In this document: positions 21,601 through 38,893 of the stretch, in pieces
How the letters are laid out: each line of letters starts with the position of its first letter
Numbering within the stretch: position 1 is the first letter of the stretch
Source of the DNA: Pecten maximus
Lineage: Eukaryota
Length of the DNA stretch: 64,000 nucleotides
Assembly (NCBI RefSeq): GCF_902652985.1
Contig: NC_047032.1
Span: forward strand, 5,580,001-5,644,000
Direction: 5' to 3'
Translations under genes and position numbers: made by a program
Notes under the pieces: generated by a model
What the model was told of the DNA's origin: nothing
What the model saw: the letters and a program-made list of their open reading frames with translations, nothing else
Databases searched by the model: none

Positions 21601-23788
21601 CATCTCCATTTATCATGAATGCAAAAAATTTCAACAATTCACATTTTAATAAAGTTATAAGATTGTTGAGACCAGATTTTGGGTCAATACTATCAAGGTC
21701 AATGGAATGTTGAAAACCAAATTAAAACATGAGTGACCATGTGCCTTTAAAACGACATAATATTTGATTAGTCTGTCTGATGATAAATCTTAAATTATAC
21801 AACATAATTAATATGAAATGACATGAGGTGAAATGCTATGACAACTTCTACTTGTACTATGTAGTCTAGTATTTACATTGGGTATAGTATCCGATCTGCA
21901 CACTGGATAGAAAATACACAGCCTCACATCAGTATAGCAGATCGATCTACAATTCTACAAGGTACCAAAAACTTCAGGGAAACGTGCCATTAACACATAC
22001 AATGTTAATCTAGACTTAATTCAAAATTTTCAACATACTCAACATATTGAACTTAGGTGTAGGGCCATGCATCTTAGTTTTTCTTTTGGACCTTCAACAT
22101 TTGATTCAAAAGTAAATATTTCATCAATTACAAGGGTTAAATAACTATGTTTTTATTACCAAAATAAAGAGCAAATACTAGATATATTTTAGTTAACAAC
22201 TAAAAATACCTAAATGAGGAGATTTAAAATTTGGACCAATTTATGAATAAAAGTGTGTACAAGTTTTTGGGGGTTTACAAAATATGGCCAGACAAAAGGA
22301 GAATTCATCTTGTAACTATACAAGACCAACAGCCAAACTTGCCTTTAACAAAATATTTAGAATTTCCAAAAAAAAAAAAAAAAAAAAACTAATTCTTTCC
22401 TATATAAAAGACATGTATTTCAAATTGCATCTGACAAAGAAACTTCAACACGCCTGCCGATCAGCATGCGTTTCAGTCATAAAGTGCGTCAATATTTAAC
22501 ATGTTGCTTTATAGCACTCCCTTACCGACACAGTTACATACAAACAAATTGTGACACATAACATAATAATCATTTCTCCCTGAATTAAAAGACAAAATGA
22601 CAGGACACTTTAGTTGTGTAGTCAAACGATTTCCACATTCCAACATGTAAACGTGATATTTGACCAATTCCTGTTGAAATTGAGTAACTCAAACACATCC
22701 AACAAGTCACTAAGAAAATAGTATTATCAAGATCTGCAACCCAGTTATTACAAACACAATATGCTCTATTTGTTCCAATTCATTTCAAATAAATATTAAA
22801 ACTGAAACATTACCAATATCATTAAGCTTTCTCGATTTTGAATTAATCTTAAAATCATTTCTAGAATAATGTGCATGACAAAATTATGCTAAATGAAGCA
22901 TTAACTTCAGATATAGATTGAACTAAAAAAGGAAATTGTTAAAATTGTTGAATTATAGTAATATCAAAATAATCAAACAATATTACACGATAAAACAGCT
23001 CCCTACTTGAAGAGGAGTGCACTAAATGACCTCTCCATACCTTGATGTACAATTCAGATCCTGTGTGTGTGCAATTAATGAAATATACTTTCATACGAAA
23101 ACTTGTTAACGGCAGTCTGATAAATTGAAATATGTACAGAGTTACAACAGTATAAACTTCATAGTTTCACTGCTTTGTAACATATTAAAATCATTGTCCA
23201 GTCGACATTGACATTTCTTTCATTTTGTTTGTTTGTTCCTTCCGGTGGACGTGCACATCTTAAATTGATGAAGAGCAATATCAGGCTCTCAAAGTCTGTA
23301 TGAAACTCTAGCTGGCTTTCTATGATTTCAATATCATACTGATAATAAATATACAAATAAAAAGGTGTCAAAAATTGATTATAGTATAAAAAATAAAATC
23401 TTGTATGAACAAGTTCACCCGCCCCTCCCACCCGCCGACTGTTCCCTCAGACACCATCAACGGTCATTAAACTTCCAGGATTATTTTCCCAACAGCAGCA
23501 CCATCGCTGTCCCTCAGAAATTTGTCCCCATAGATACTAATTTTGCCCCCGCACACAACATCACCAGAACAGCTATCTTACACTTCAAATGGTCTATATA
23601 TTGCATTGAAATGGAAAAATTTCAGAAAAAATGTTACATTTCTTAGAAATTTTCTTCACGAAAATTGAAATGCTATGTGCCAGGAACTCGGTGGTCTTTC
23701 CCATTGTGGTGTCTATTTGTTTTAGTTTAATTTTTCTGCCAAGCTAGAGATGTAAGGTAAGGTCCATCTCCTTCCCATTGATGTCTGC
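18620..23788 (-). other. Probable long (~5 kb) syndecan 3' UTR
   Basis: AT-rich stretch with no tandem arrays downstream of the stop codon. Minus-strand AATAAA at 18645-18640, followed by a TTGTTTTGTT tract. Other AATAAA hexamers exist, so the end is tentative. Confidence 0.4.
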
Positions 23789-23952
23789 TCACGCATAGAA
23801 CTCTTTTTCTGGTGCTTTCATGTAGGAATAGTTTGTGAATTTCTGTTCTTCCAGGGCATAGCTGCCTTCGTCCTTCTTTCGCATGCGATACACGATGAAC
23901 ATGACCAGAAGTATAGCCCCCAGCAATCCAACCACTGCCCCGGCTATCACAG
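23789..23952 (-). CDS. Sdc: Syndecan TM + cytoplasmic exon
   Basis: [54 protein letters not shown]; acceptor TTCTCTTTACAG. Confidence 0.98.
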
Positions 23953-26900
23953 CTGTAAAGAGAATTTTAGTGTGGAGTAAAAATCGACAAGGCAACTAAG
24001 ATGTGGTTCTGTAAATGCAAAATGTAAACTTGTAAACTTAATTCGCTTAACAAGTTTTATCATTATTCAACTTATATTGATCAATCTGGGCCTGGATTGA
24101 AGGATCTGAGTGGTCTTATTGTCAGAGGAAACCAGAGTACCTGAGTAAAACCCATGTGGCCAATACCTGTTCATGTCCGATCACGATATCAAACCCCAGC
24201 CGCCTATGTGGCCGGGCAGGTGACCAATACCTGTTCATGTCGGATCACGTTATCAAACCCCAGCCGCCTATGTGGCCGGGCAGGTGACCAATACCTGTTC
24301 ATGTCGGATCAGGATATCAAAGCCCAGCAGCCTATGTGGACATGCCTGTGTGATACCACTGTACCACTAACATGTAAGGGGAAATGGTTCAGGGAGCACA
24401 TCTTACTTGGTCACAGTGGGTAAATATTATTGATATATATTGACACAGTTTCGTGAGGATCACATCAGCTCAGCAGTTCCTGAGATAAGCTAGTTTCATT
24501 GCATTTGGATGGACAGGACGGGCATAGGTACCTCTCCCCCTCCACTCAATTTAATAATATGATTTGTTCATGTACAATGATCTATATGATCCTTTTGCAA
24601 CTAACTGTATAACTATGTCATTGAAGTTTGAGACAAAATATGAGATAATTCAGAATGGATAACAACTCACCTCCCATAACAAATGGTTTTGCCAGAAATT
24701 TCATTTCACTTTCGCCCTCATGTGACAGATTGCTGCTCGACAGATTATCCTCCTCTTCGGGCTCCTGGGGGTCAATGGGATCCACTTCAATATCCTTTGG
24801 TTTTGGTGTTGCCTCCTGCTCTGGGGCAAGTGTAGAACCAACTGTAAGCAAAGAATCTTCATGAAAATTCACGTAAGTGAAAAGCAGATTTTTTAAAGGA
24901 TAGTTTGTTTTTTATTACCTTTAAAAACACATTATTTGCTTTCCTTTCATGATTCGTTGATGCAGACAGAAAGTCAACAAATAAAAGCTTCAAACTAATT
25001 TTCAAGTTTTTTTTTTTTTTTTTTTTCAACATATGTAATTTAAATTATATTTTAATAAGTTCCTTTAAATTGTTACAGATCATTTATACCTGTTTTTTCA
25101 TTATTATTTACAGAATTTAGTTTTGAGTACATAATGTTTGGAGAATTTTCTTCAAATGATTATATCAGAGAACTTTTATTCATCTTTTTTTAGTTTCAAT
25201 GTTTTATCAAATCTACACTCTGGGTGGAGTAAATATGTTTCCTTAGTAATTTTTCAAAAGTTCCACATTTTGTTGGATCAAGGGAAGTAACTCCAACTGT
25301 TTACACTGTAGCGTAACCAGTAATCAAGAAAGACAACTGTAGCAGGTTAATGTATTCTGATGTCCAATGTGTAGGTATGGAAAAGCTCCATAGCATAAGA
25401 AAAAGGATAAAAATTGATAGAAACAGGACAGCTAAAATGATGCATGCAAATGTTAGTAGAGAAAGAGAAAATGTAAATACAACATGCCAAAAATATACAA
25501 AATGCTAGGCCAAAGAAATCAATGTGGTTCGGCTAATGAATCACCGTGTTACCAGGTATTCTGCAACTCAAGTCGCCAAACATTCGCGTACTTGAGTTTA
25601 CAAGAATTACCCTGTATTCTTCTGCTGGAGTATGAAGAATACTGGTAGTCAACGAATACAGCATTACTGAGTTGACTCATTCAGGGCCTCTTTTAGAGGA
25701 ATACCAAACTTTTAATTTCCTTGACCTTCCTCAGTGACTTACTGTGGTTAAATTAGAATACTCTAACATTTCTATAGGTGTTAGTTCACACAGCTACCAT
25801 CCAGTCCACTCATGCTGTGTTTTGGCAGTTACTCAATAAATTTCCAGGCCATTAATCAATGAATATTCAAATCATTAATTTATAATTTATTAATATTCAG
25901 AATATTCCTTGATGACTATTTAGACCAATTGTCAATGAATATTCAAATCATTAACTTATTAATATTCAGAATATTCCTTGATGACTATTTAGACCAATAA
26001 CCAATGAATATTCAAATCATTAATTTATTAATATTCAGAATATTCCTTGATGACTATTTAGACCAATTATCAATGAATATTCAAACCATTAATACAAATT
26101 TCAAATCAATTTTTTGATCAGAGTTACTTGAATTTTCCTGAAAATATTGATGAGCGCAATAAATATTTGAGTCAGCCAAAGGCTGATGAGATAAACGGAG
26201 GGAATGATACATGGATCTGTTACTATTGCAGTACTGGTAGTTATACAACTAACAGAGCTTGATTTTCTGTATGTGTTACTTAGTTGTATGTTTATCATAG
26301 AACACTCATTCAAATTGTAAAACACCTATTATCAAAACAAAGCAAGTCCAACAGAACGTAATAATTCACTCAAGTGATAATTGATATTATTCACATCCTC
26401 ACCATAGGAATCAACCAATCCCCTACCCAAAAATTCTCTAACACAGCAGTACATCCCTCCTTGGCCCTGCTAAACAGCTCACTCCTCCAAAACAGCTGTT
26501 AAATCTCATCCCTACCCAACCCCTCCAAAACAGCAATCTCTAACCCCTGCCTAGCCCCTCCTACAACGATCTTTAACCCCTGCCTAGCCCCTCCAAAACA
26601 GCAATCTCTAAACCATACCTAGCCCCTCCTAAACAACAATCTATAACCCCTGCCTAGCCCCTCCTACAACAATCTATAACCCTTGCCTAGCCCCTCCTAC
26701 AACAATCTCTAACCCCTGCCTAGCCCCTGCCTAGCCCCTGCCTAGCCCCTCCTACAACAATCTCTAACCCCTGCCTAGCCCCTCCTACAACAATCTCTAT
26801 CCCCTGCCTAGCCCCTCCTACAACAATCTATAACCCCTGCCTAGCCCCTCCTAAACAACAATCTATAACCCCTGCCTAGCCCCTCCTACAACAATCTCTA

Positions 26901-29900
26901 TCCCCTGCCTAGCCCCTCCTACAACAATCTATAACCCGTGCCTAGCCCCTCCTACAACAATCTCTAACCCCTGCCTAGCCCCTCCTAAACAACAATCTAT
27001 AACCCCTGCCTAGCCCCTCCTAAACAACAATCTATAACCCCTGCCTAGTCCCTCCTACAACAATCTATAACCCCTGCCTAGTCCCTCCTACAACAATCTA
27101 TAACCCTTGCCTAGCCCCTCCTACAACAATCTATAACCCCTGCCTAGCCCCTCCTACAACAATCTATAACCCCTGCCTAGTCCCTCCTAAACAACAATCT
27201 ATAACCCCTGCCTAGTCCCTCCTACAACAATCTATAACCCCTGCCTAGCCCCTCCTAAACAACAATCTATAACCCCTGCCTAGTCCCTCCTACAACAATC
27301 TATAACCCCTGCCTAGCCCCTCCTACAACAATCTATAACCCCTGCCTAGCCCCTCCTAAACAACAATCTCTAACCCCTGCCTAGCCCCTCCTACAACAAT
27401 CTATAACCCCTGCCTAGTCCCTCCTACAACAATCTATAACCCCTGCCTAGTCCCTCCTACAACAATCTCTAACCCCTGCCTAGCCCCTCCTAAACAACAA
27501 TCTATAACCCCTGCCTAGTCCCTCCTACAACAATCTCTATCCCCTGCCTAGCCCCTCCTACAACAATCTATAACCCCTGCCTAGCCCCTCCTACAACAAT
27601 CTCTATCCCCTGCCTAGCCCCTCCTACAACAATCTCTAACCCCTGCCTAGCCCCTCCTACAACAATCTCTAACCCCTGCCTAGCCCCTCCTACAACAATC
27701 TATAACCCCTGCCTAGCCCCTCCTACAACAATCTATAACCCCTGCCTAGCCCCTCCTACAACAATCTATAACCCCTGCCTAGCCCCTCCTACAACAATCT
27801 CTAACCCCTGCCTAGCCCCTCCTAAACAACAATCTATAACCCCTGCCTAGCCCCTCCTACAACAATCTCTATCCCCTGCCTAGCCCCTCCTACAACAATC
27901 TATAACCCCTGCCTAGCCCCTCCTACAACAATCTCTATCCCCTGCCTAGCCCCTCCTACAACAATCTCTAACCCCTGCCTAGCCCCTCCTACAACAATCT
28001 ATTACCCCTGCCTAGTCCCTCCTACAACAATCTATAACCCCTGCCTAGCCCCTCCTACAACAATCTATTACCCCTGCCTAGTCCCTCCTACAACAATCTA
28101 TAACCCCTGCCTAGTCCCTCCTACAACAATCTCTATCCCCTGCCTAGTCCCTCCTACAACAATCTATAACCCCTGCCTAGCCCCTCCTACAACAATCTCT
28201 AACCCCTGCCTAGTCCCTCCTACACCAATCTCTAACCCCTGCCTAGCCCCTCCTAAACAACAATCTATAACCCCTGCCTAGCCCCTCCTACAACAATCTA
28301 TAACCCCTGCCTAGCCCCTCCTACAACAATCTATTACCCCTGCCTAGCCCCTCCTACAACAATCTCTAACCCCTGCCTAGCCCCTCCAAAACCCTTCCAA
28401 AACTGTCATTTCTTACCCTCCTCCCATCGTTCAATCAAGTCATATTCCTTATTCCTCCAGAGTAGTTGACAATCCACCCCCCCCCCCCCCCCCTACCCCC
28501 TCGGGAACAGCAGGCACACCCCCAACCCTCCCTACCCCCTCGGGAACAGCAGGCAGTCACCATCCCTGGCCAGCTGTTGTTGTACTTACATTCTGTATCA
28601 ATATAGTCAATGATAAGTGGTGGATCTGTATCGACTACGTACTGAAAAACAAAACAAACCACAGTTGTTAACAAATAGATCAGAGGTCAACAACATCAAT
28701 CAGTGATATTCATAAACTTATTATATCCTTTTTATCCTAGGCTCAAATACAATAACTACCAACGGTTAAAACAAGCTTCATTAAAGGTGTCTTATTTTCT
28801 CTTTTTACTTTTAATTCTGATGCAGCATTCTACTTCCTTACATATCTCTATCTAAAAACTAACAAAACTATTACTGACTTTGTCATTAATCTTCATTTGT
28901 ATTGATTTTTCCATCTAAATATTTTCTATCTTTTTCAGGGGGATCCATTTGGAGATTTTTAAGCCTAAGTTCGAATTCAAATTTTTGAAATCTTTTTGAC
29001 ATCTTGAAGTCTTTCTGAACCCTATTACCACTGATAAAGGAATTTCCAATTCTGCTGACAGTTAATTTGGTATTTAAGTAAGTCTTGCAGGTGTATGTTT
29101 AAGTCACCAAAATTATCACTGAATGCTACAGATGTACAGCCCATGACCCTATATGGTATTTAATACTTATTGTCAATGGACAGTTTTATCATCCTCTCAA
29201 GTGTTGAAAACAAGTACAAAAGTGAAACAATCAGCTAATAAGCTGAGGTTTGTTGTACTTGTGAGACTAAATTCTAGTAGCTGCATGCTACAGATATATA
29301 TATATATATATATATATCACTCACTGGAGCAGACAGATCTCTCTCCATAAGGCCTAGTCATTTCATTTTAATTCACAGCCTCCATTTTATTAAATAAATG
29401 ATGCATCACATATAAAAACACATAGAAATTCCTTTTCAAACTGTTTTTTTTTATGTACACCTGCAGTCTCACTTCAATATGTCAAAGTTATGCACTAACA
29501 TTTTAAGAGCTTGTTGGATATGAACAGTTTGTGAGAGCTTGTTGGATATGAACAATTTGTGAGAGCTTGTTGGATATGTACAGGCTGTGAGAGCTTGTTG
29601 GCACATGTATGGGTTGTAAGAGCTTGTTGGATATGTACAGTTTGTGAGAGCTTGTTGGATATGTAGTATGTGAGAGCTTGTTAGATATGTACAGTTTGTG
29701 AGAGCTTGTTGAATATGTACAGCTTGTGAAAGTTTGTTGGATATGTACAGTTTGTGAGAGCTTGTTGCACTTATACTAGTTATGAGAGCTTGTTGGATAT
29801 GTAAAGTTTGTGAGAGCTTGTTGGCATATGTATGAGTTATGAGAGCTTGTTTGATATGTACAGCTTGTGAGAGCTTGTTGGATATGTAGTTTGTGAGAGC

Positions 29901-32900
29901 TTGTTAGATATGTACAGTTTGTGAGAGCTTGTTGAATATGTAGTTTGTGAGAGCTTGTTAGACATGTACAGTTTGTTGGATATGTAGTTTGTGAGAGCTT
30001 GTTGAATATGTAGTTTGTGAGAGCTTGTTAGACATGTACAGTTTGTTGGATATGTACAGTTTGTGAGAGCTTGTTAGACATGTACAGTTTGTGAGAGCTT
30101 GTTGAATATGTAGTTTGTGAGAGCTTGTTAGATATGTAGTTTGTGAGAGCTTGTTGAATATGTAGTTTGTGAGAGCTTGTTGGATATGTAGTTTGTGAGA
30201 GCTTGTTGAATATGTAGTTTGTGAGAGCTTGTTGGATATGTAGTTTGTGAGAGCTTGTTAGACATGTACAGTTTGTTGGATATGTACAGTTTGTGAGAGC
30301 TTGTTGAATATGTACAGCTTGTGAAAGTTTGTTGGATATGTACAGTTTGTGAGAGCTTGTTGCACTTATACTAGTTATGAGAGCTTGTTGGATATGTAAA
30401 GTTTGTGAGAGCTTGTTGGCATATGTATGAGTTATGAGAGCTTGTTTGATATGTACAGCTTGTGAGAGCTTGTTGGATATGTAGTTTGTGAGAGCTTGTT
30501 AGATATGTACAGTTTGTGAGAGCTTGTTGAATATGTAGTTTGTGAGAGCTTGTTAGATATGTAGTTTGTGAGAGCTTGTTGAATATGTAGTTTGTGAGAG
30601 CTTGTTGGATATGTAGTTTGTGAGAGCTTGTTGGATATGTAGTTTGTGAGAGCTTGTTGGATATGTAGTTTGTGAGAGCTTGTTAGATATGTACAGTTTG
30701 TGAGAGCTTGTTGAATATGTAGTTTGTGAGAGCTTGTTAGACATGTACAGTTTGTTGGATATGTAGGATATGTAGTTTGTGAGAGCTTGTTGAATATGTA
30801 GTTTGTGAGAGCTTGTTAGACATGTACAGTTTGTTGGATATGTAGTTTGTGAGAGCTTGTTGGATATGTATGGGTTGTGAGAGCTTGTTAGACATGTACA
30901 GTTTGTGAGAGCTTGTTGAATATGTAGTTTGTGAGAGCTTGTTGAATATGTAGTTTGTGAGAGCTTGTTGAATATGTAGTTTGTGAGAGCTTGTTAGACA
31001 TGTACAGTTTGTTGGATATGTACAGTTTGTGAGAGCTTGTTGAATATGTAGTTTGTGAGAGCTTGTTAGACATGTACAGTTTGTTGGATATGTAGTTTGT
31101 GAGAGCTTGTTAGACATGTACATGATAAAAGAAAATAAGAGCTCTTTAAATACATATATATTGCCAGAGCTCATTGGATATAACCAGCTTGTGTTGACCT
31201 AATGAAAAGCACCAGTCATGACAAGAGAATGCCTTTATTTCAGGCTGTGTTTTTCCTTAAACAATATCCTCTTTATTCTTACTATGATTCCATAACTCTG
31301 ATATGTATGTAGGTATCTTTGTAGCAGTATTTCTAGCAGAAATTGCAGAAAAGTAATAAAACCAAATAAAAATGTCTATAGATAGTGAATTTTTTAAAAA
31401 TCTTACAAAATCATTAAATTATTTTTAATTGATGGGTCGTATACCACTCGTTAAAACAGGTGCTAGTATTAGGTCTAGTATGTTACAGATACTTACTCCA
31501 TTGTCAGGTTTCTTGCTAGGCTTGCTAGTGACAGGTCCTGGAGTCGTGTTGGCCTTAGTTGTCATTGTCTTTACTGTAGTTGCTACACAGGCACAAAATA
31601 TCACATTTATTTTTCCCCATTGTACAATAAGAATGTTACTCTCCGTCAACTAAGACATCAAACCACCTGTACAGAAGCCCTCAAAATACATCTGGACAAT
31701 GTTAAACATGTCATCCCATTGATTTCATTTTGATTTCAAACTTTTTACCAACATTGTTGTTTTATCATTCAAATTCCATTGAAAGTGTGACAATGGCATT
31801 TTTGTGTGTGATTACCTTGTCATTGATTTGTCTTAACAATCTCCGGAATTGACGACATGATAAGGTGTTGGAAAACACAAGCTTGTTGCAGTGGTAAAGT
31901 TATAAAAAGAATCTATTCTACGCAACATCCGATTAATTGTAAACATGCAATAGTAGACCCTGATCAGATGACCTGATCACATGATCAGGTCATGTGACCT
32001 GATCACATGACATGTAGCAACGGATGAGGTGGAAACATGCAACATTAATATTGAACTGTTAACAACTACAATAACAAGGGAATTAAATGTCATGATTCGC
32101 ACCAAATCAACTCATAGCGCAACAAATTGTGACAAAAATCACTTGCCATGTGCTTTTCCAAAAATAAAAGATGTGAAAGATGATGTTGAATGATGATTTC
32201 AGGCAACAGACAATAGAAGATAGTTTATATTTGTATTCCAGGTTAACTGTGTGTCTACAATGAGTAGGATTTGAACGACCCAATGCTGTAAACACAATGT
32301 TTTTTCTGTTTTCCATGCCTTAATGTCCATTGCTATCTATTCCATTTTATTGATTTAAAGAAATGAGCAAAACTAGAAACAGCAAATATTTTTGATTTGG
32401 CCTAATGACACAAAACACGGTAGCACAAACCCAACTTCAAAGGTCTGCAGTGTAAATATTGACTCAACATGATTAAGACTGTATACCCCTGCTTAGAAAC
32501 TAAATTTAACGGTGGTACTCGCAACAAAAAATACATTCTTGGTATGTGTTATTTTCAAAGATTTTTTCTCTAATTTGAATCTACATTAGCAATGCATATA
32601 TATATATATATGTGTGTGTTGGTGATCCGAAGATATAGATTTGAATTTCCTGTCGTAGTTGTACAGAGAGAAATATATATAATATATGAATACATTGCGA
32701 TCCAGATATTCATATCATCTTATAGACGACTTCCACAATGATCATGTCAGGGTATAGGGCCGACCATCTCTGCGCCATTGAAACATTCTTTTTTGAAGAA
32801 CGCCGATGTGGCGCAGCGGTATAAGCTGCGGGTATTTCTGGCTAGGCGATTGGGTGCCGTAGATCGTGAGTTCGAGGCCCGGTCAGGGCACGAGTCAAAA

Positions 32901-35900
32901 AGTTGTCTTCCTTCGTCATTTGTGTTTCTAAGCTATATATATATATATATATATTTAACTACCCCATGAAACTCTACATCACCCTGTGTTAGTCTACAGT
33001 ACCCCGTGTAAGTCTACAGTACCCTGTGTAAGTCTACAGTACCCTGTGTAAGTTACCCTGTGTAAGTCTAAAGTCCCCTGTGTAAGTCTACAGTACCCTG
33101 TGTAAGTCTACATCACCCTGTGTAAGTCTACATCACCCCGTGTAAGTATACAGTCCCCTGTGTAAGTCTACAGTACCCTGTGTAAGTCTACATCACCCTG
33201 TGTAAGTCTACAGTACCCTGTGTAAGTCTACAGTACCCTGTGTAAGTCTACAGTACCCTGTGTAAGTCTACAGTCCCCTGTGTAAGTCTACATCACCCTG
33301 TGTAAGTCTACAGTCCCCTGTGTAAGTATACAGTCCCCTGTGTAAGTCTACATCACCCCGTGTAAGTATACAGTCCCCTGTGTAAGTCTACAGTACCCTG
33401 TGTAAGTCTACAGTCCCCTGTGTAAGTATACAGTACCCCGTGTAAGTCTACATCACCCCGTGTAAGTATACAGTCCCCTGTGTAAGTCTACAGTACCCTG
33501 TGTAAGTCTACAGTCCCCTGTGTAAGTATACATTACCCTGTGTAAGTCTACATCACCCTGTGTAAGTCTACAGTCCCCTGTGTAAGTCTACATCACCCTG
33601 TGTAAGTCTACAGTACCCTGTGTAAGTATACAGTCCCCTGTGTAAGTCTACAGTACCCTGTGTCAGTCTACAGTCCCCTGTGTAAGTATACAGTCCCCTG
33701 TGTAAGTCTACAGTACCCTGTGTCAGTCTACAGTCCCCTGTGTAAGTATACAGTACCCTGTGTAAGTCTACATCACCCCGTGTAAGTATACAGTCCCCTG
33801 TGTAAGTCTACAGTACCCTGTGTAAGTCTACATCACCCTGTGTAAGTCTATAGTACCCTGTGCAAGTCTACAGTACCCTGTGTAAGTCTACAGTACCCTG
33901 TGTAAGTCTACAGTACCCTGTGTAAGTATACAGTCCCCTGTGTAAGTCTACATCACCCTGTGTAAGTCTACAGTCCCCTGTGTAAGTCTACAGTACCCTG
34001 TGTAAGTCTACAGTCCCCTGTGTAAGTATACAGTCCCCTGTGTAAGTCTACAGTCCCCTGTGTAAGTCTACAGTACCCTGTGTTATCTTTTTGATTTTCC
34101 TCACAGACATCCTTACATTTATACACAAAATACACAAATGTGCAGGATACAAAAATAAAGATTTCCAGGGCAAATTAATATGAGACAGATCGGTGACCTT
34201 ATTGATCATTAATGACAACATATGGGTCCTGAAGAAGTACCTCATATAGAAACAGTAACAAACTTACAGAAATTACTCATTTGTTATAAACTACCGTTAT
34301 AGAAGTTTTAAAACTAAAACTTCACATGATACCGTGTACAAAATTTGATGACAAAGTTTGCTATGTACAAGTGCAATTTACAATACTTGTGCAATGCTAC
34401 AAGAAGATAAACCAGCTAGATATTAAATGAGAAAGTAGAAGACAAAATCACCGATATATAAAACAGAGTTAGAAAATACAAACCACCTACAGTTAAACGA
34501 GAAAAGGATTTCCCTGTCATCTACCCACCACAAACAACATGACAAGGTGATTAGGAATCTATCAGACATATTAACACTACATACAAAGTACTGACATTTC
34601 CGAGTGACATTTCTGGTCTATTTCAACCATATCTATAGCCTGGCTGTGTCTCCGGATCACCAATTGGGAGTCTACACACCTACTCAAACTTCAAATGTAT
34701 CAAATTCTTTTTGCCCAGTTTTTTTTTTCCTACAATTTCCGATTCCATTTTTAGGAAATTTTATATGGTCTTAATTTCCGAGGGACATTTTAATAATATT
34801 CAAATATTACCTTTTTTTGTTAACTGTTTTAAATTTTTTGCTCATGGTTCAAGAATCACTCCTAACAATACTAATTATTTTTTTATACTTCTTCGTGAAG
34901 TTTTATTTAGAAGTTGAAATGATTTTTGTTATTGACAACAAAAGACATTTGAAAATATTTTTTGGGAGTTTGCTAAGCCCAATACCAGTAAAGGAGGATA
35001 TCTGTCTGAATCCTTTGAAGTAGATGAATGTATAATGGAAGGAGCTAAAGTGGGATGAATACCTTTACAATTAGGTGTTTTTGACGAGCGCACACGTGTG
35101 TTGTGACGTTCATTTCCTTTGTCATCCACACACCAACAGTCTCCCTCGAAACACTGGATGTCTTCAAACTCTCCGTCGATGGTACACCGCGGAGGGTAAG
35201 TTCCAAGCTTACCCCAGCTGTTCTTGAGGAGTAGGAATACACACTTTTTTATCGTTGAACCTGGAACAACAAACCGTTAACGCTTCATATAAAAGGGGAG
35301 ACAGAATAAATCAGCTACGTCCAGACAATGAAAAACAGACAGAAACAGTTAAAAACTGTTGGTTTTCTTACTAGGTTAAAAATAAATTCAAATAAATTTG
35401 AATTCCAGTGATTATTGTAATGATCCAGTCAGTTGTTGGTGTACACCTTTATAACCCATGGTACTGATACCACACATGTTTCTGGACTTCCTTAGATGGA
35501 CACAATGACAAGAAAATATTTTTCTCTTTTATTCTCTAGTTGAAAGCTTTTTTGACTCATCAGCTTGAAAGCTTGACAACGAGGGGAAAAAGCTAGGTGT
35601 GGATAAAGGAAAATGCTGAAATGTGTGGCTATATATAAACTTTTTAATGCTTCATGTATTATCCCAGACAACTACGGTAAATGTGAGACCTTGATTTAGT
35701 TATATAACATTGTCTGTTATGAGTCCTATGTTAAATGTCACCTTGTCTGCTCTACTTTTGGAATGGTACTTGGGTTGTATACGGAAGTTGAAACCTACAA
35801 CTAGATGCATGGTTGTAGTATATTTTTTTCTGTTACAACTACGATAGGTAGACTGTTTTGTGGGTCTGTAAAATTCTGGATAGATAAGACTGTTTTGTGG

Positions 35901-37159
35901 GTCTGTAAAATTTTGGATAGGTAGACCGGTTTAATTGTTCTTTAGTTTAGTTGGTATTTTTTAACATCCTATCAACAGCTATGGTCATTTAAGGACAGCC
36001 TACTTTTGGCGAGTGTGGGTGTATTTTGGGTGTTTGTCTCCTTTTGATAGTGCAGATTAACTGACACAGAATTTATAGTGCTATCTCACTGAAGCATACT
36101 GTGGCGAGTGTGGGTGTATTGTGTGTGTTTGTCTCCTTTTGATAGTGCAGATTAACTGACACAGAATTTATAGTGCTATCTCACTGAAGCATACTACCAA
36201 AGACATCCAATAATATAAGCCACCCAGTCACCAAACTCACCAAACTGACAGTCGGGTGTCGTTGGTCCATGCATGGTTGTGCCCTCTACACGGTTACCAT
36301 TTGGGAACACACACCAGCACTCATCAATGCCAGGCTCTCCCCGGCACTGTAGACGCTCGAAATCACCATCCAATGTACATCTTGGCACAAAAGATTTTGT
36401 TTCACGCGCATAATCTGGATCTTTTACAGAATTCCGCATTGTTTCACATTCTGAAAATGATCTTGTAGACTGGGGCTGTGTTGTAAATTCACCCAGAAAA
36501 CCTAAAATCAAAGTGAGTGATGCATCATAATGTAGTGAAGCCAGGAAAATAAAGAAAAGTTGAAATACCTTGATTTGTATAATATGTACATGTGGTACTA
36601 ACAAATATTGTAGCAAGAAATTAAAACCATCTAAAAAGCTTCTACCAAAGATCAAAGTAACCGCCAACATTTCTGTTATACATATATATGCCATATATAT
36701 TCAGGAAGTGTCACTTAAATTTTATTTTTATTTTTCCCTCTTTTTTCATGGAAAGAACAAAATTACAAAAAAGATACATTATACATAACAAAAATTAATA
36801 CATGATACATTACAAAAATAATGATTACCAAAAATTATGACCTTTTTCATGACTTTTTTAAAAAGAATATTTCTACAAAATGTATTGCTTTGAACTTTTT
36901 GATAAAATGTACAATTTTAAGAATAGAAAGACACTTTACAAAATCTATATTAATTAAAATAATTCCTGTATATAGATGTGCCCTTTCCTCCTACTAAGTT
37001 AAACATCACGGATACAAACTCCCTACCTTTGCCAGATCCTGATATTTCAATATCGTCGTCATCATCATCATCATCATCTGTAGATCCTTCCAGCATATCT
37101 TCATCGTCTGATTCTATCGTCCCATGTCCACTACCATTGTGTTCCAACTCTGCCCCATC
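23789..37159 (-). CDS. Sdc: Syndecan with two thyroglobulin type-1 domains, 5'-partial (354 aa); exons 37159-37027, 36501-36241, 35260-35063, 31582-31497, 28641-28590, 24841-24671, 23952-23789
   Basis: The last exon encodes [24 protein letters not shown] (GxxxG), C1 [10 protein letters not shown] and PDZ-binding EFYA*. The first visible exon has acidic GSG/SGSG GAG sites. All introns are GT-AG and the phases chain 0-1, 1-1, 1-1, 1-0, 0-1, 1-1, 1-stop. Confidence 0.88.
24100..24370 (-). mobile_element. Degenerate tRNA-head SINE (V-domain-like body) with an internal ~63-bp amplification
   Basis: GAGGAAACCAGAGTACCTGAGTAAAACCCA resembles the V-SINE core. The minus strand has A-box-like TGGTACAGTGG and B-box-like GGTTTGATATC. 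CCAATACCTGTTCATGTC occurs three times. Confidence 0.55.
24671..24841 (-). CDS. Sdc: Syndecan juxtamembrane exon (phase 1-1)
   Basis: [56 protein letters not shown]; TTACAG acceptor, G|GTGAGT donor. Confidence 0.92.
25857..26092. repeat. ~70-78-bp tandem triplication
   Basis: CAATGAATATTCAAATCATTAA...GAATATTCCTTGATGACTATTTAGACCAAT x3. Confidence 0.85.
26515..28390. repeat. 33-bp minisatellite (G-rich on the syndecan sense strand)
   Basis: Unit AACCCCTGCCTAGCCCCTCCTACAACAATCTAT. Confidence 0.97.
28590..28641 (-). CDS. Sdc: Syndecan 52-nt small exon (phase 0-1)
   Basis: [17 protein letters not shown]; strong acceptor TTTGTTTTGTTTTTCAG and donor T|GTAAGT. Restores the phase between its neighbours. 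Confidence 0.82.
29506..31122. repeat. 26/28-bp minisatellite
   Basis: Unit GTTTGTGAGAGCTTGTTGGATATGTA(CA). Confidence 0.97.
31497..31582 (-). CDS. Sdc: Syndecan Thr/Pro/Lys-rich stalk exon (phase 1-0)
   Basis: [29 protein letters not shown]; acceptor TTTTGTGCCTGTGTAG, donor GGA|GTAAGT. Confidence 0.85.
32612..32933 (+). mobile_element. ~320-bp element in (TA)n containing a tRNA-like Pol III head
   Basis: (TA)n on both sides. A box TGGCGCAGCGG (~32809) and B box GAGTTCGAGGC (~32868). Locally CpG-rich. Confidence 0.6.
32970..34083. repeat. 20-bp minisatellite
   Basis: Unit CCCTGTGTAAGTCTACAGTA. Confidence 0.97.
35063..35260 (-). CDS. Sdc: Syndecan exon: thyroglobulin type-1 domain 2 (198 nt, phase 1-1)
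   Basis: [66 protein letters not shown]: 6 Cys with PxC, QC and CWCV. TTGTTCCAG acceptor, AAG|GTATTC donor. Confidence 0.92.
35945..36195 (-). mobile_element. Truncated SINE fragment (Meta-SINE-like) with a 95-bp internal duplication
   Basis: TTTATAGTGCTATCTCACTGAAGCA and TTTAACATCCTATCAACAGCTATGGTCATTTAAGGAC resemble bivalve SINE body/tail sequence as I recall it. Duplicate copies start at 36007 and 36102. Confidence 0.5.
36241..36501 (-). CDS. Sdc: Syndecan exon: thyroglobulin type-1 domain 1 (261 nt, phase 1-1)
   Basis: [68 protein letters not shown]: 6 Cys with CWCV. TTTTAG acceptor, G|GTGAGT donor. Confidence 0.93.
37027..37159 (-). CDS. Sdc: Syndecan exon with GAG-attachment sites (phase 0-1)
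   Basis: [44 protein letters not shown]: Ser-Gly dipeptides flanked by acidic runs. Donor AAG|GTAGGG. Confidence 0.88.
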
Positions 37160-37170
37160 CTACAACACAC

Positions 37171-38490
37171 CAAGGTCAAACACTGGTTTACTGACAAGGT
37201 CAAACACTGGTTTACTGACAAGGTCAAACACTGGTTTACTGACAAGGTCAAACACTGGTTTACAGGCAAGGGCAAACACTGGTTTACTGACAAGGGCAAA
37301 CACTGGTTTACTGACAAGGTCAAACACTGGTTTACTGACAAGGTCAAACACTGGTTTACTGACAAGGTCAAACACTGCAGCTTGGTTTACTGACAAGGTC
37401 AAACACTGGTTTACTGACAAGGTCAAACACTGGTTTACAGGCAAGGGCAAACACTGGTTTAAATTTACTGGCAAGGTCAAACACTGGTTTACTGACAAGG
37501 TCAAACACTGGTTTACTGACAAGGTCAAACACTGGTTTACTGACAAGGTCAAACACTGGTTTAAATTTACTGGCAAGGTCAAACACTGGTTTACTGACAA
37601 GGTCAAACACTGGTTTAAATTTACTGGCAAGGTCAAACACTGGTTTACTGACAAGGTCAAACACTGGTTTACAGGCAAGGTCAAACACTGGTTTACTGAC
37701 AAGGTCAAACACTGGTTTACTGACAAGGGCAAACACTGGTTTACTGACATGGTCAAACACTGGTTTACTGACAAGGTCAAACACTGGTTTACTGACAAGG
37801 TCAAACACTGGTTTACTGACAAGGTCAAACACTGGTTTACTGACATGGTCAAACACTGGTTTACTGACAAGGTCAAACACTGGTTTACTGACAAGGTCAA
37901 ACACTGGTTTACAGCAATTCAACAACTGGTTTACTGACAAGGCAAACATTTTAGGCAGTTAAACATGGTTTACTGAAAAAGGCAAACATGTTTACTGACA
38001 GGTCAACACTTTACTGACTGTCAAAACACTTTTACTGAACAAGTGCAACCCCTGTTTAATTATTAACTTCAAGTGCAACATCTATTACTGAATCAAACTT
38101 CAAGTGACAGTCAACTTTACTACTTCAAGGACGACAGTCATACCCGTTTACTAACGTCAACGTACAGCATCAACATGTTTAAATCTTACTGCAAGTGCAA
38201 CATCTGTTACTTGACTAAGTTCAAGTGACAATCAACACTGTTTACTGACAAGTCAACACTGGTTTACTACATGGTCAACTTTATCTACACTGTCAAAGTT
38301 TACAATTACTGGCAGTCAACACTGTTATTCTACAAGTCAAACACGGTTTACTGACAATCCAACACTGTTTACTGAACCAAGGATCAACTGGTTTAAATTT
38401 ATGAAGGTCAAACATGGTTACTGAAAGGTCAACACTGCTGCTTGGTCTTTAATGACAACTCAAACACTATTACGTGACAATCAACACTGT
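37171..38490. repeat. 24-bp minisatellite (clean to ~37945, then degenerate)
   Basis: Unit CAAGGTCAAACACTGGTTTACTGA. Confidence 0.95.
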
Positions 38491-38491
38491 T

Positions 38492-38893
38492 CTTTATCTA
38501 ACTCAGTGACCATCTCAACTTTATCTAACTTCAAGTGACCATCACATTACTTTAAACTAACTTCAATGGCCATCTCATTACTTTATCTAACTTCAAGTGA
38601 CCATCTCATTACTTTATCTAACTTCAAGTGACCATCTCATTACTTTATCTAACTTCAAGTGACCATCTCATTACTTTATCTAACTTCAAGTGACCATCTC
38701 ATTACTTTATCTAACTTCAAGTGACCATCTCATTACTTTATCTAACTTCAAGTGACTTGACTATCCCATTACTTTATCTAACTTCAAGTGACCATCTCAT
38801 TACTTTATCTAACTTCAAGTGACAATCACATTACTTTATCTAACTTCAAGTGACCATCTCACTACTTTATCTAACTTCAAGTGACCATCTCAT
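38492..38893. repeat. 31-bp minisatellite
   Basis: Unit ACTTTATCTAACTTCAAGTGACCATCTCATT. Confidence 0.93.

What the first reader, a model, noticed from the sequence alone, without database searches (positions are those of the whole stretch)
35063..36501. Syndecan carrying two tandem thyroglobulin type-1 (TY) domains in its ectodomain
Seen: two exons, each a complete 6-Cys TY module (PxC...G.F...QC...CWCV...G...C), lie between the acidic Ser-Gly exon and the stalk/TM/EFYA exons, on the same strand and in frame. The ORF track captures only the C-terminal end of the second domain. Known: vertebrate, fly and worm syndecan ectodomains are largely disordered and lack Cys-rich folded domains. TY modules occur in equistatin, p41 invariant chain, testicans, IGFBPs, nidogen, SMOC and EpCAM, and some inhibit papain-family cathepsins or bind IGF. 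Inference: a sheddable cell-surface heparan-sulfate proteoglycan fused to protease-inhibitor or growth-factor-binding modules. I cannot confirm whether this architecture has already been described in molluscs.
Basis: partly seen in the sequence, partly recalled or inferred. Interest (0 to 1): 0.85.

Follow-up and report, generated by a model that had tools for sequence, protein, structure and literature searches.

The report
Scallop syndecan with two thyroglobulin-type domains
The two cysteine-rich exons really are spliced into the scallop's only syndecan gene, and the same design (a folded thyroglobulin type-1 module inside an otherwise floppy cell-surface proteoglycan) is shared by molluscs, annelids, brachiopods, nemerteans and probably bryozoans; it sits in sequence databases, but I found no paper that describes it.

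Summary
Window 36501-36241 and 35260-35063 (minus strand) are two phase 1-1 exons. Each encodes a complete six-cysteine thyroglobulin type-1 (TY) domain (Pfam PF00086, E 8e-15 and 2e-14). They lie between an acidic Ser-Gly exon and the stalk and TM/EFYA exons (PF01034 Syndecan, E 1e-24).

RNA contigs from four runs of four studies show the three predicted junctions, one of them in three runs only. They run on into the next stalk exon and 0.7-1.1 kb further.

The window is Pecten maximus. RefSeq LOC117316581 isoform X2 (377 aa, "uncharacterized protein") matches the window exactly over aa 24-377. It is the only syndecan locus in the genome.

The architecture is not scallop-specific. PF00086+PF01034 proteins occur in bivalves, gastropods, cephalopods and a chiton (two TY domains). 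They also occur in annelids, a brachiopod and nemerteans (one TY) and a bryozoan (partial TY). No named arthropod or nematode entry has a TY domain.

AlphaFold gives a confident TY pair (pLDDT 83-96) in a disordered ectodomain.

Function is untested. My best guess is a membrane-tethered thyropin-like binding or inhibitor module working beside the heparan sulfate chains. No paper found describes it. I rate it a lineage-wide variant of a known family, of moderate interest.

The parts
37027..37159 (-). Acidic Ser-Gly exon ([13 protein letters not shown]...D9...IEISGSGK). It carries the putative heparan-sulfate attachment sites and starts in phase 0 and ends in phase 1.
   Evidence: AG/GT borders. 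Identical to P0154 aa 24-68. Junction 37027>36501 seen in RNA contigs of 3 runs. SG sites flanked by acidic residues are read directly from the sequence, and the GSG / DDED / SGxxSGSG consensus is conserved in alignment A2.
36241..36501 (-). TY1 exon: a complete thyroglobulin type-1 domain (6 Cys, QC, CWCV), phase 1-1.
   Evidence: Pfam PF00086 E 7.6e-15, profile 1-67/67. RNA contigs cover 36239-36499 with 0-1 mismatches in 4 runs. Identical to P0154 aa 68-155. pLDDT 83-96.
35063..35260 (-). TY2 exon: the second thyroglobulin type-1 domain (6 Cys, LG.Y.P.C, QC, CWCVD), phase 1-1.
   Evidence: Pfam PF00086 E 2.2e-14. Junctions 36241>35260 and 35063>31582 seen in 4 of 4 runs. Identical to P0154 aa 155-220.
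31497..31582 (-). Stalk exon 1: Thr/Ser/Pro-rich, mucin-like ([29 protein letters not shown]), phase 1 to 0.
   Evidence: AG/GT borders. RNA contigs in 4 runs. P0154 aa 221-249. Low conservation and pLDDT below 55.
28590..28641 (-). Stalk exon 2 ([17 protein letters not shown]), phase 0 to 1.
   Evidence: The 30-nt loose end of the RNA contigs beyond 31497 is an exact match to 28612-28641. P0154 aa 250-266.
24671..24841 (-). Stalk exon 3 (acidic, membrane-proximal; ...[13 protein letters not shown]), phase 1-1.
   Evidence: P0154 aa 268-323 match exactly. AG acceptor and GT donor read. tblastn of scallop orthologues.
23789..23952 (-). Terminal coding exon: transmembrane helix ([21 protein letters not shown], containing GxxxG), cytoplasmic C1 region ([10 protein letters not shown]), V region, C2 region (EFYA) and the stop codon. 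The 3' UTR continues below 23789.
   Evidence: Pfam PF01034 E 1.1e-24. Sequence read. P0154 aa 324-377. This is the top PF01034 match in the genome.

Best explanation
SHOWN. This is the single-copy syndecan gene of the king scallop (Pecten maximus LOC117316581). The gene spans at least 84 kb on the minus strand.

The mature protein is a type-I membrane proteoglycan core. Its parts, in order, are:
- signal peptide (its exon lies 43 kb beyond the window end)
- an acidic segment with Ser-Gly sites
- two tandem TY domains, each on its own phase 1-1 exon
- a Thr/Pro-rich and acidic stalk
- a GxxxG transmembrane helix
- the canonical C1-V-C2 cytoplasmic tail ending in EFYA

The TY exons are included in every RNA contig seen here. 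The TY insertion is a lophotrochozoan trait. There is one TY domain in annelids, a brachiopod and nemerteans, and a partial one in a bryozoan. There are two in all mollusc classes sampled, which fits a tandem exon duplication in the mollusc stem lineage.

INFERRED. The TY pair is a rigid, disulfide-locked island between the distal HS-bearing segment and the stalk. I think it most likely works as a thyropin-like module that binds, and probably inhibits, papain-family cysteine cathepsins at the cell surface or after shedding. The protein's own HS chains could then concentrate the protease or tune the inhibition.

I give the architecture and identity about 0.95, and the thyropin function about 0.3-0.35.
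For: Domains: both TY exons and the last exon pass the Pfam cut-offs.

Splicing: RNA contigs from 4 studies contain the three junctions. They run on into exon 28641 and then 726 nt (X7) and 1065 nt (X8) further, while only 387 nt are needed to reach the stop codon.

Gene model: RefSeq protein P0154 is identical to the window over aa 24-377.

Copy number: the only other PF01034 match in the genome is a neurexin-like exon.

Distribution:
- 31 of the 150 best syndecan cluster representatives carry PF00086.
- All named PF00086+PF01034 entries are lophotrochozoans. They include Magallana gigas K1PIE7, Lottia, Haliotis, Biomphalaria 'syndecan', Octopus, Liolophura, Capitella, Owenia, Lingula 'syndecan-4' and Lineus.
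- Many come from short transcript-sized contigs of 1.1-3.8 kb that encode the whole TY-TM-EFYA protein.

Fold:
- The TY pair has pLDDT 83-96, while the rest of the ectodomain is below 60.
- Foldseek matches the saxiphilin TY pair and thyroglobulin at E 3e-8, p41 Ii (1icf) at TMt 0.72 and the IGFBP-1 C-domain at TMt 0.72-0.76.

Constraint: the TY region is the second most conserved part of the protein after TM/cytoplasmic, at 0.53-0.56 against 0.15-0.3 for the stalk. All Cys residues and the inter-domain linker PDC..G.NL..CVF are conserved in molluscs.

Function lead:
- TY2 keeps the L1 Gly...Pro-x-Cys motif that the thyropin literature discusses (PMC10889554).
- A two-domain tick thyropin is modulated by GAGs.
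- The membrane-anchored EpCAM TY domain inhibits cathepsin L (PMC8114703).
Against: No functional datum exists for any TY-syndecan. Many TY domains (IGFBPs, nidogen, thyroglobulin itself) are not protease inhibitors, and sequence alone does not predict inhibition.

The loops that would contact a protease vary between species. Scallop TY1 lacks the L1 Gly found in thyropins.

The link from exon 28641 to the TM exon in P. maximus RNA rests on contig length, the RefSeq model and orthologous transcripts. I could not read the contig letters there.

Contigs cannot exclude minor TY-skipping isoforms. Skipping would stay in frame, because both exons are phase 1-1.

Taxon sampling outside Lophotrochozoa is limited to named entries among the best 120-150 hits of each search.
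Confidence: 0.8

Rival explanations
1. The TY pair is a ligand-capture module for secreted signalling proteins, for example insulin-like peptides as with the IGFBP C-domain, or Wnt/BMP-type morphogens as with the TY-bearing proteoglycans testican/Cow and SMOC. It would cooperate with the HS chains as a co-receptor and would not be a protease inhibitor.
For: The model superposes on the IGFBP-1 C-terminal TY domain about as well as on p41 (TMt 0.72-0.76). IGFBP-1 is also a sequence hit for TY1. The literature search turned up papers on two TY-bearing matricellular proteins that act on morphogens: Drosophila Cow, a secreted HSPG (PMC4216105), and SMOC (PMC5360445). I saw only their titles and abstracts.
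Against: To my knowledge, high-affinity IGF binding by IGFBPs also needs the N-terminal domain, which is absent here. No ligand is known. The sequence hits are generic TY hits.
Confidence: 0.2
2. The TY pair is mainly structural. Either it is a rigid spacer or cis-dimerisation/adhesion module, as in EpCAM/Trop2, that positions the HS chains. Or it is a regulated cleavage site that controls shedding, as with ADAM10 cleavage in the Trop-2 TY loop.
For: EpCAM and Trop2 are type-I membrane proteins with a TY domain and are structural hits (E 0.01-0.04). The inter-domain linker is strongly conserved, which suggests a fixed two-domain geometry. A paper titled for Trop-2 cleavage in the TY loop appeared (PMC8042651). 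The TM helix already has a GxxxG dimerisation motif, read directly from the sequence.
Against: EpCAM and Trop2 need flanking N- and C-domains for their dimer, and these are absent here. Their Foldseek scores are much weaker than those for saxiphilin, thyroglobulin and p41. No self-association test was run.
Confidence: 0.25
3. The TY exons are not really part of the syndecan mRNA. They would belong to a nested gene, an assembly chimera or a gene-model artefact.
For: None was found. In principle the two exons could be skipped in frame.
Against: Exact exon-exon junctions on both sides of both TY exons appear in RNA contigs of four studies. The same architecture occurs in dozens of species from several phyla, including proteins from single short transcript contigs.
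Confidence: 0.02

Closest known systems
Canonical syndecans (vertebrate SDC1-4, Drosophila Sdc, C. elegans SDN-1)
   Same: Pfam Syndecan domain; GxxxG transmembrane helix; C1 [10 protein letters not shown] and C2 EFYA tail; N-terminal Ser-Gly sites in an acidic context; a single gene per invertebrate genome (review PMC8061687).
   Different: To my knowledge, the canonical ectodomains have no folded Cys-rich domain. Here, about 140 residues of the ectodomain form two TY domains.
Lophotrochozoan database 'syndecans' with PF00086+PF01034 (e.g. Magallana gigas K1PIE7, Lottia LOTGIDRAFT_235646, Biomphalaria 'syndecan', Capitella CAPTEDRAFT_227529, Lingula 'syndecan-4')
   Same: These are orthologues with the same order of parts: SG region, TY domain(s), stalk, TM, EFYA.
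   Different: Molluscs have two TY domains. Annelids, the brachiopod and nemerteans have one, and the bryozoan Bugula has only a partial one. The scallop entry is named only 'uncharacterized protein'.
Testican/SPOCK and Drosophila Cow (secreted TY-bearing HS/CS proteoglycans)
   Same: A TY domain and GAG attachment sites sit on one core protein.
   Different: These are secreted with no TM segment or syndecan tail, have additional Kazal/follistatin and EC domains, and carry only one TY domain. This rests on general knowledge and on the titles and abstracts listed.
EpCAM/Trop2 and the CD74 p41 isoform (membrane proteins with one TY domain)
   Same: A membrane-anchored TY domain. The EpCAM TY domain (PMC8114703) and the p41 fragment (PDB 1icf, a hit) act on cathepsin L.
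   Different: They have no syndecan tail and no Ser-Gly/acidic HS region. They carry a single TY domain set in other domains. CD74 is a type-II membrane protein.
Multi-domain thyropins (saxiphilin TY pair, tick IrThy, equistatin)
   Same: Tandem TY domains. The best structural match is the saxiphilin TY pair. IrThy inhibition is modulated by GAGs (PMC10889554).
   Different: They are soluble proteins without a membrane anchor or GAG chains of their own. Inhibitory activity of the scallop domains is untested.

Membership tests
Syndecan | Pfam PF01034 Syndecan domain (TM plus cytoplasmic) above the gathering score | tested here: met
   86.6 bits against a cut-off of 25.2 for the exon alone. 91.9 bits for P0154.
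Syndecan | Conserved C1 ([10 protein letters not shown]) and C2 (EFYA, PDZ-binding) cytoplasmic motifs at the C-terminus | tested here: met
   Read directly. These positions are invariant in the alignment of 150 syndecan representatives.
Syndecan | Type-I topology: signal peptide, ectodomain and a single TM helix | tested here: met
   Signal-peptide exon MSWKLLFLTVAVLILGSCTA... found at G000:C18:5687463. Predicted helices at residues 3-21 and 319-352.
Syndecan | Ser-Gly GAG attachment sites in an acidic context that actually carry heparan sulfate | not testable with these tools
   The motifs are present (NGSGHG; D9-IEISGSGK) and conserved. Glycanation itself needs biochemistry.
Syndecan | Single syndecan gene per invertebrate genome | tested here: met
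   A PF01034 scan of the scallop's own genome gave this locus plus one neurexin-like exon ending KEWYV.
Thyroglobulin type-1 (TY) domain, subtype 1A | Pfam PF00086 above the gathering score; six Cys; QC and CWCV motifs | tested here: met
   54.5 and 53.1 bits against a cut-off of 20.6. Six Cys in each domain. The Cys residues are conserved or nearly so across the 70 orthologues.
Thyroglobulin type-1 (TY) domain, subtype 1A | Predicted fold matches solved TY domains | tested here: met
   pLDDT 83-96 over residues about 81-222. Foldseek probability 1.00 to saxiphilin, thyroglobulin, p41 (TMt 0.72) and IGFBP-1 (TMt 0.72-0.76).
Thyropin (MEROPS I31 cysteine-protease inhibitors) | Measured tight-binding inhibition of papain-family proteases | not testable with these tools
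A complex prediction would have needed a spliced scallop cathepsin model, which I could not hand in.
Thyropin (MEROPS I31 cysteine-protease inhibitors) | L1 loop with conserved Gly and Pro before Cys2 (as discussed in PMC10889554) | tested here: inconclusive
   TY2 has [10 protein letters not shown], and the mollusc consensus is GLLG.Y.PRC. Scallop TY1 has TKSFVPRC with no Gly.

The most novel reading that the evidence does not exclude
Lophotrochozoan syndecans are membrane-tethered hybrids of a thyropin and a heparan-sulfate proteoglycan. In this reading the conserved TY module binds or inhibits pericellular cysteine cathepsins or another protease. The protein's own HS chains set its potency or specificity in cis. 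Protease control, shedding and syndecan signalling would thus be coupled in one molecule, a function that ecdysozoan and vertebrate syndecans lack.
Probability: 0.2. Interest if true: 0.7.

Novelty: new variant of a known kind. Interest (0 to 1): 0.45.

Why it matters
To my knowledge, syndecan ectodomains are usually treated as disordered GAG carriers. The two syndecan papers I checked (PMC1464127, PMC8061687) mention no folded or thyroglobulin-type ectodomain module.

Here a whole superphylum keeps a folded, disulfide-rich TY module in that ectodomain. It is more conserved than the rest of the ectodomain, and it was duplicated in molluscs.

This gives a natural test case for what a structured domain adds to a cell-surface HSPG. 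It also offers a candidate link between HS biology and pericellular cathepsin control. On the practical side, it allows a simple annotation correction: LOC117316581 and its scallop orthologues are syndecans.

It is not a new gene family, and the architecture is already recorded by automatic annotation. The interest is therefore moderate.

Tried and rejected
- A heuristic scan of the window for a signal-peptide exon upstream of 37160 found nothing credible. Exon 1 turned out to lie 43 kb beyond the window end.
- My first gene model joined exon 28641 directly to 23952. tblastn and exact peptide mapping showed an extra exon at 24841-24671, and I corrected the model.
- The listing of cluster members on ten TY-less syndecan representatives gave almost no names, so it did not help with taxonomy.
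- Literature searches combining syndecan with thyroglobulin type-1, thyropin, mollusc or lophotrochozoa terms found no relevant paper.
- Rfam found nothing in 23000-38500.
- The search of earlier findings had nothing for this place or these words.
- A tree of TY domains groups the mollusc TY1 domains together and the TY2 domains together. Which of the two the single TY of other phyla corresponds to is not resolved (support 67/71).
- Complex prediction was not used. I do not claim a specific binding pair, and a scallop cathepsin chain would have required a joined multi-exon model.
- I did not hand in a self-joined spliced protein. The exons were searched one by one by reference. Whole-protein work used the database protein P0154, returned, which is identical to the window's exons over aa 24-377.


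Full report
**1. What is in the sequence**

On the minus strand, 36501-36241 and 35260-35063 are bounded by AG and GT. Both exons start and end in phase 1. The preceding exon ends ...ggc aaa g|gt, and each TY exon begins gt... and ends ...g|gt (direct reading).

The first exon reads [87 protein letters not shown]. The second reads [66 protein letters not shown].

Each exon, searched on its own by reference, matches Pfam Thyroglobulin_1 well above the gathering score (54.5 and 53.1 bits; E 7.6e-15 and 2.2e-14). The terminal coding exon 23952-23789 matches Pfam Syndecan (86.6 bits, E 1.1e-24). It reads ...[53 protein letters not shown]-stop.

The upstream exon 37159-37027 encodes [13 protein letters not shown]...[17 protein letters not shown]. 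This is the classical acidic Ser-Gly context for GAG attachment.

**2. Are the exons joined in RNA?**

About twenty public runs from eight studies hold roughly 0.26 of the sampled words of 35063-36501. That is the share expected if they hold only the two exons.

I laid the contigs of four runs from four studies on 31440-37165. The joints have GT..AG ends, seen as CT..AC on the plus strand:
- 35063>31582 in 4 of 4 runs
- 36241>35260 in 4 of 4 runs
- 37027>36501 in 3 of 4 runs (the fourth contig ends inside TY1)

No alternative joint that skips a TY exon was reported, but contigs drop rare variants.

The part of the contigs that runs beyond 31497 begins with 30 letters that match 28612-28641 exactly, which is the next exon. 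The contigs go on 726 nt (X7) and 1065 nt (X8) past 31497. Only 387 nt are needed to reach the stop codon through exons 28641-28590, 24841-24671 and 23952-23789.

I could not read those further letters. The last link in this species therefore rests on contig length, on the RefSeq model and on the orthologues described below.

**3. Identity of the gene**

A phmmer search with the TM/cytoplasmic exon against 1.84 billion representatives gave 714 syndecan-like proteins.

A follow-up search returned P0154, NCBI 'uncharacterized protein LOC117316581 isoform X2 [Pecten maximus]', 377 aa. Its residues 24-377 map without a mismatch onto seven window exons:
- 37159-37027
- 36501-36241
- 35260-35063
- 31582-31497
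- 28641-28590
- 24841-24671
- 23952-23792

The window is therefore P. maximus.

Residues 1-23, the signal peptide, are not in the window. Their exon lies at G000:C18:5687463, 43 kb beyond the window end. An optional cassette exon (…RDLIDIDSK…, used in a Ylistrum isoform) lies about 2.1 kb beyond the window end.

A PF01034 scan of the whole genome finds only this locus and a weak match that is a neurexin-like C-terminal exon. This is therefore the scallop's single syndecan.

Every exon was searched by reference. Whole-protein steps used P0154, as returned by the database.

**4. How widespread is the architecture?**

Of the 150 best syndecan representatives, all carry PF01034 and 31 also carry PF00086.

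Two homologue searches, with a scallop query and a Lingula query, each list about a hundred PF00086+PF01034 clusters. Every one that has a name is a lophotrochozoan:
- Bivalves: Pecten, Mizuhopecten, Ylistrum, Mytilus, Magallana gigas K1PIE7, Saccostrea 'probable syndecan', Pinctada, Dreissena, Mercenaria, Mya 'SDC-like', Mactra 'cell surface proteoglycan', Sinanodonta, Solemya
- Gastropods: Lottia, Patella, Haliotis 'syndecan-like', Pomacea, Biomphalaria 'syndecan', Lymnaea, Elysia, Arion
- Cephalopods: Octopus, Argonauta
- A chiton: Liolophura
- Annelids: Capitella, Owenia, Ridgeia, Paralvinella
- A brachiopod: Lingula 'syndecan-4'
- Nemerteans: Lineus, Tubulanus

Many unnamed entries come from contigs of only 1.1-3.8 kb that encode the entire protein from signal peptide to EFYA. 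These can only be spliced transcripts.

Named arthropod entries (tick, hemipterans) and a nematode entry lack a TY domain.

Molluscs have two TY domains, and the other phyla have one. The bryozoan Bugula entry keeps only the C-terminal half of a TY domain (22.9 bits).

In a tree of the domains, the mollusc TY1 domains group together and the TY2 domains group together. The single domains fall mostly on the TY2 side, with weak support. This fits a tandem exon duplication before the mollusc classes split, but it does not prove it.

**5. Structure and constraint**

AlphaFold2 was run on P0154 with a 70-row orthologue alignment. It gives pLDDT 83-96 for residues about 81-222, which is the TY pair. 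The signal peptide and the helix at 319-352 are also confident. The rest of the ectodomain is below 60.

Foldseek against the PDB gave these matches:

| Target | Score |
|---|---|
| Saxiphilin TY pair and thyroglobulin | E about 3e-8 |
| p41 invariant-chain fragment bound to cathepsin L (1icf) | TMt 0.72 |
| IGFBP-1 C-domain | TMt 0.72-0.76 |
| EpCAM/Trop2 | E 0.01-0.04 |

Sequence searches of the PDB give the same generic TY hits.

Across orthologues the TY region is the most conserved part after the TM/cytoplasmic domain (0.53-0.56 against 0.15-0.3 for the stalk). The Cys residues, the QC and CWCV motifs and the inter-domain linker PDC..G.NL..CVF are conserved in molluscs.

**6. Mechanism**

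The following is shown: a type-I syndecan core whose ectodomain has distal Ser-Gly sites, then a folded TY pair, then a mucin-like and acidic stalk.

The following is inferred: the TY pair is a binding module. I favour a thyropin-like role, meaning binding or inhibition of papain-family cathepsins, at about 0.3-0.35. My reasons are:
- The best-understood activity of free or membrane-tethered TY domains is cathepsin inhibition (the p41 fragment, PDB 1icf; EpCAM, PMC8114703).
- Tandem TY inhibitors exist, and the potency of one is strongly modulated by GAGs (tick IrThy, PMC10889554).
- TY2 keeps the L1 Gly...Pro-x-Cys motif.

Against this, many TY domains do not inhibit proteases, the loop sequences vary, and scallop TY1 lacks the L1 Gly.

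The rival readings are ligand capture of the IGFBP or testican/Cow/SMOC type (about 0.2) and a structural, dimerising or cleavage-switch role as in EpCAM/Trop2 (about 0.25). An artefact reading is excluded (about 0.02).

**7. Comparison and novelty**

All syndecan criteria that could be tested here are met, and both domains are bona fide TY subtype 1A. Membership in the thyropin inhibitor family is not established.

The architecture is already present in public databases, with both Pfam domains precomputed and often the name 'syndecan'.

Seven full-text searches found no paper that mentions a TY domain in a syndecan. The 2006 comparative-genomics paper had only cytoplasmic-domain ESTs for molluscs and does not mention it (PMC1464127). 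The word thyroglobulin does not occur in the text of a 2021 review (PMC8061687).

I rate it a lineage-wide variant of a known family. It is real, conserved, expressed, uncharacterised and of moderate interest.

Noticed in passing
window 26502-28387, 29506-31111, 32973-34083, 37171-38010: Four large intronic minisatellites: 33-nt unit x about 50 copies, 26-nt x about 59, 20-nt x about 56, and 24-nt x about 35. They create long spurious ORFs on both strands, for example 36978-37937 and 37160-37900.
   Followed up: partly
window 32586-32967 and 35833-36214 (95-nt unit x2 at 36007-36195): Intronic stretches are covered by many short RNA contigs at very high depth, up to about 4800 in run X8, with loose ends into unrelated sequence. 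This looks like a dispersed repeat or mobile element transcribed elsewhere, not part of the syndecan mRNA. There was no Rfam match.
   Followed up: no
G000:C18:5687463 (L005) and about C18:5646060-5646100 (L003), both beyond the window end: The signal-peptide exon of the syndecan gene lies 43 kb past the window end, so the first intron or introns span about 70 kb. A short optional exon (…TNRRSERLTRDLIDIDSKA…), matching the N-terminal extension of a Ylistrum isoform, lies 2.1 kb past the window end.
   Followed up: partly
L002 (G000:C3:20935331-20938456), ORF 1399-1815 minus: The only other PF01034 match in the genome is a terminal exon ending ...KKKDVKEWYV. It looks neurexin-like, which I judge from memory of neurexin tails, and it is not a second syndecan.
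   Followed up: partly
related proteins P0190, P0192, P0023, P0178; P0002 and P0161: Some gastropod entries (e.g. Babylonia LOC143276824) add a K319L-like PKD domain N-terminal to the TY pair. Babylonia has two TY-syndecan genes. One unnamed entry carries a further domain, PF07699. Tegillarca granosa has adjacent genes KUTeg_000368 (one TY domain) and KUTeg_000369 (two TY domains).
   Followed up: no
window 36300-36330 (TY1, CWCVFPNG): Scallop TY1 reads CWCVFPNG where the mollusc consensus is CWCVD..G. Ylistrum shares this. From memory the p41 invariant-chain fragment has a similar motif. I did not check this with a tool, so it is only a lead.
   Followed up: no
window 23789 downwards: RNA contigs imply a 3' UTR of at least about 680 nt below the stop codon: 1065 nt lie past 31497 and 387 nt of these are coding. 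Its end and the polyadenylation signal were not mapped.
   Followed up: no
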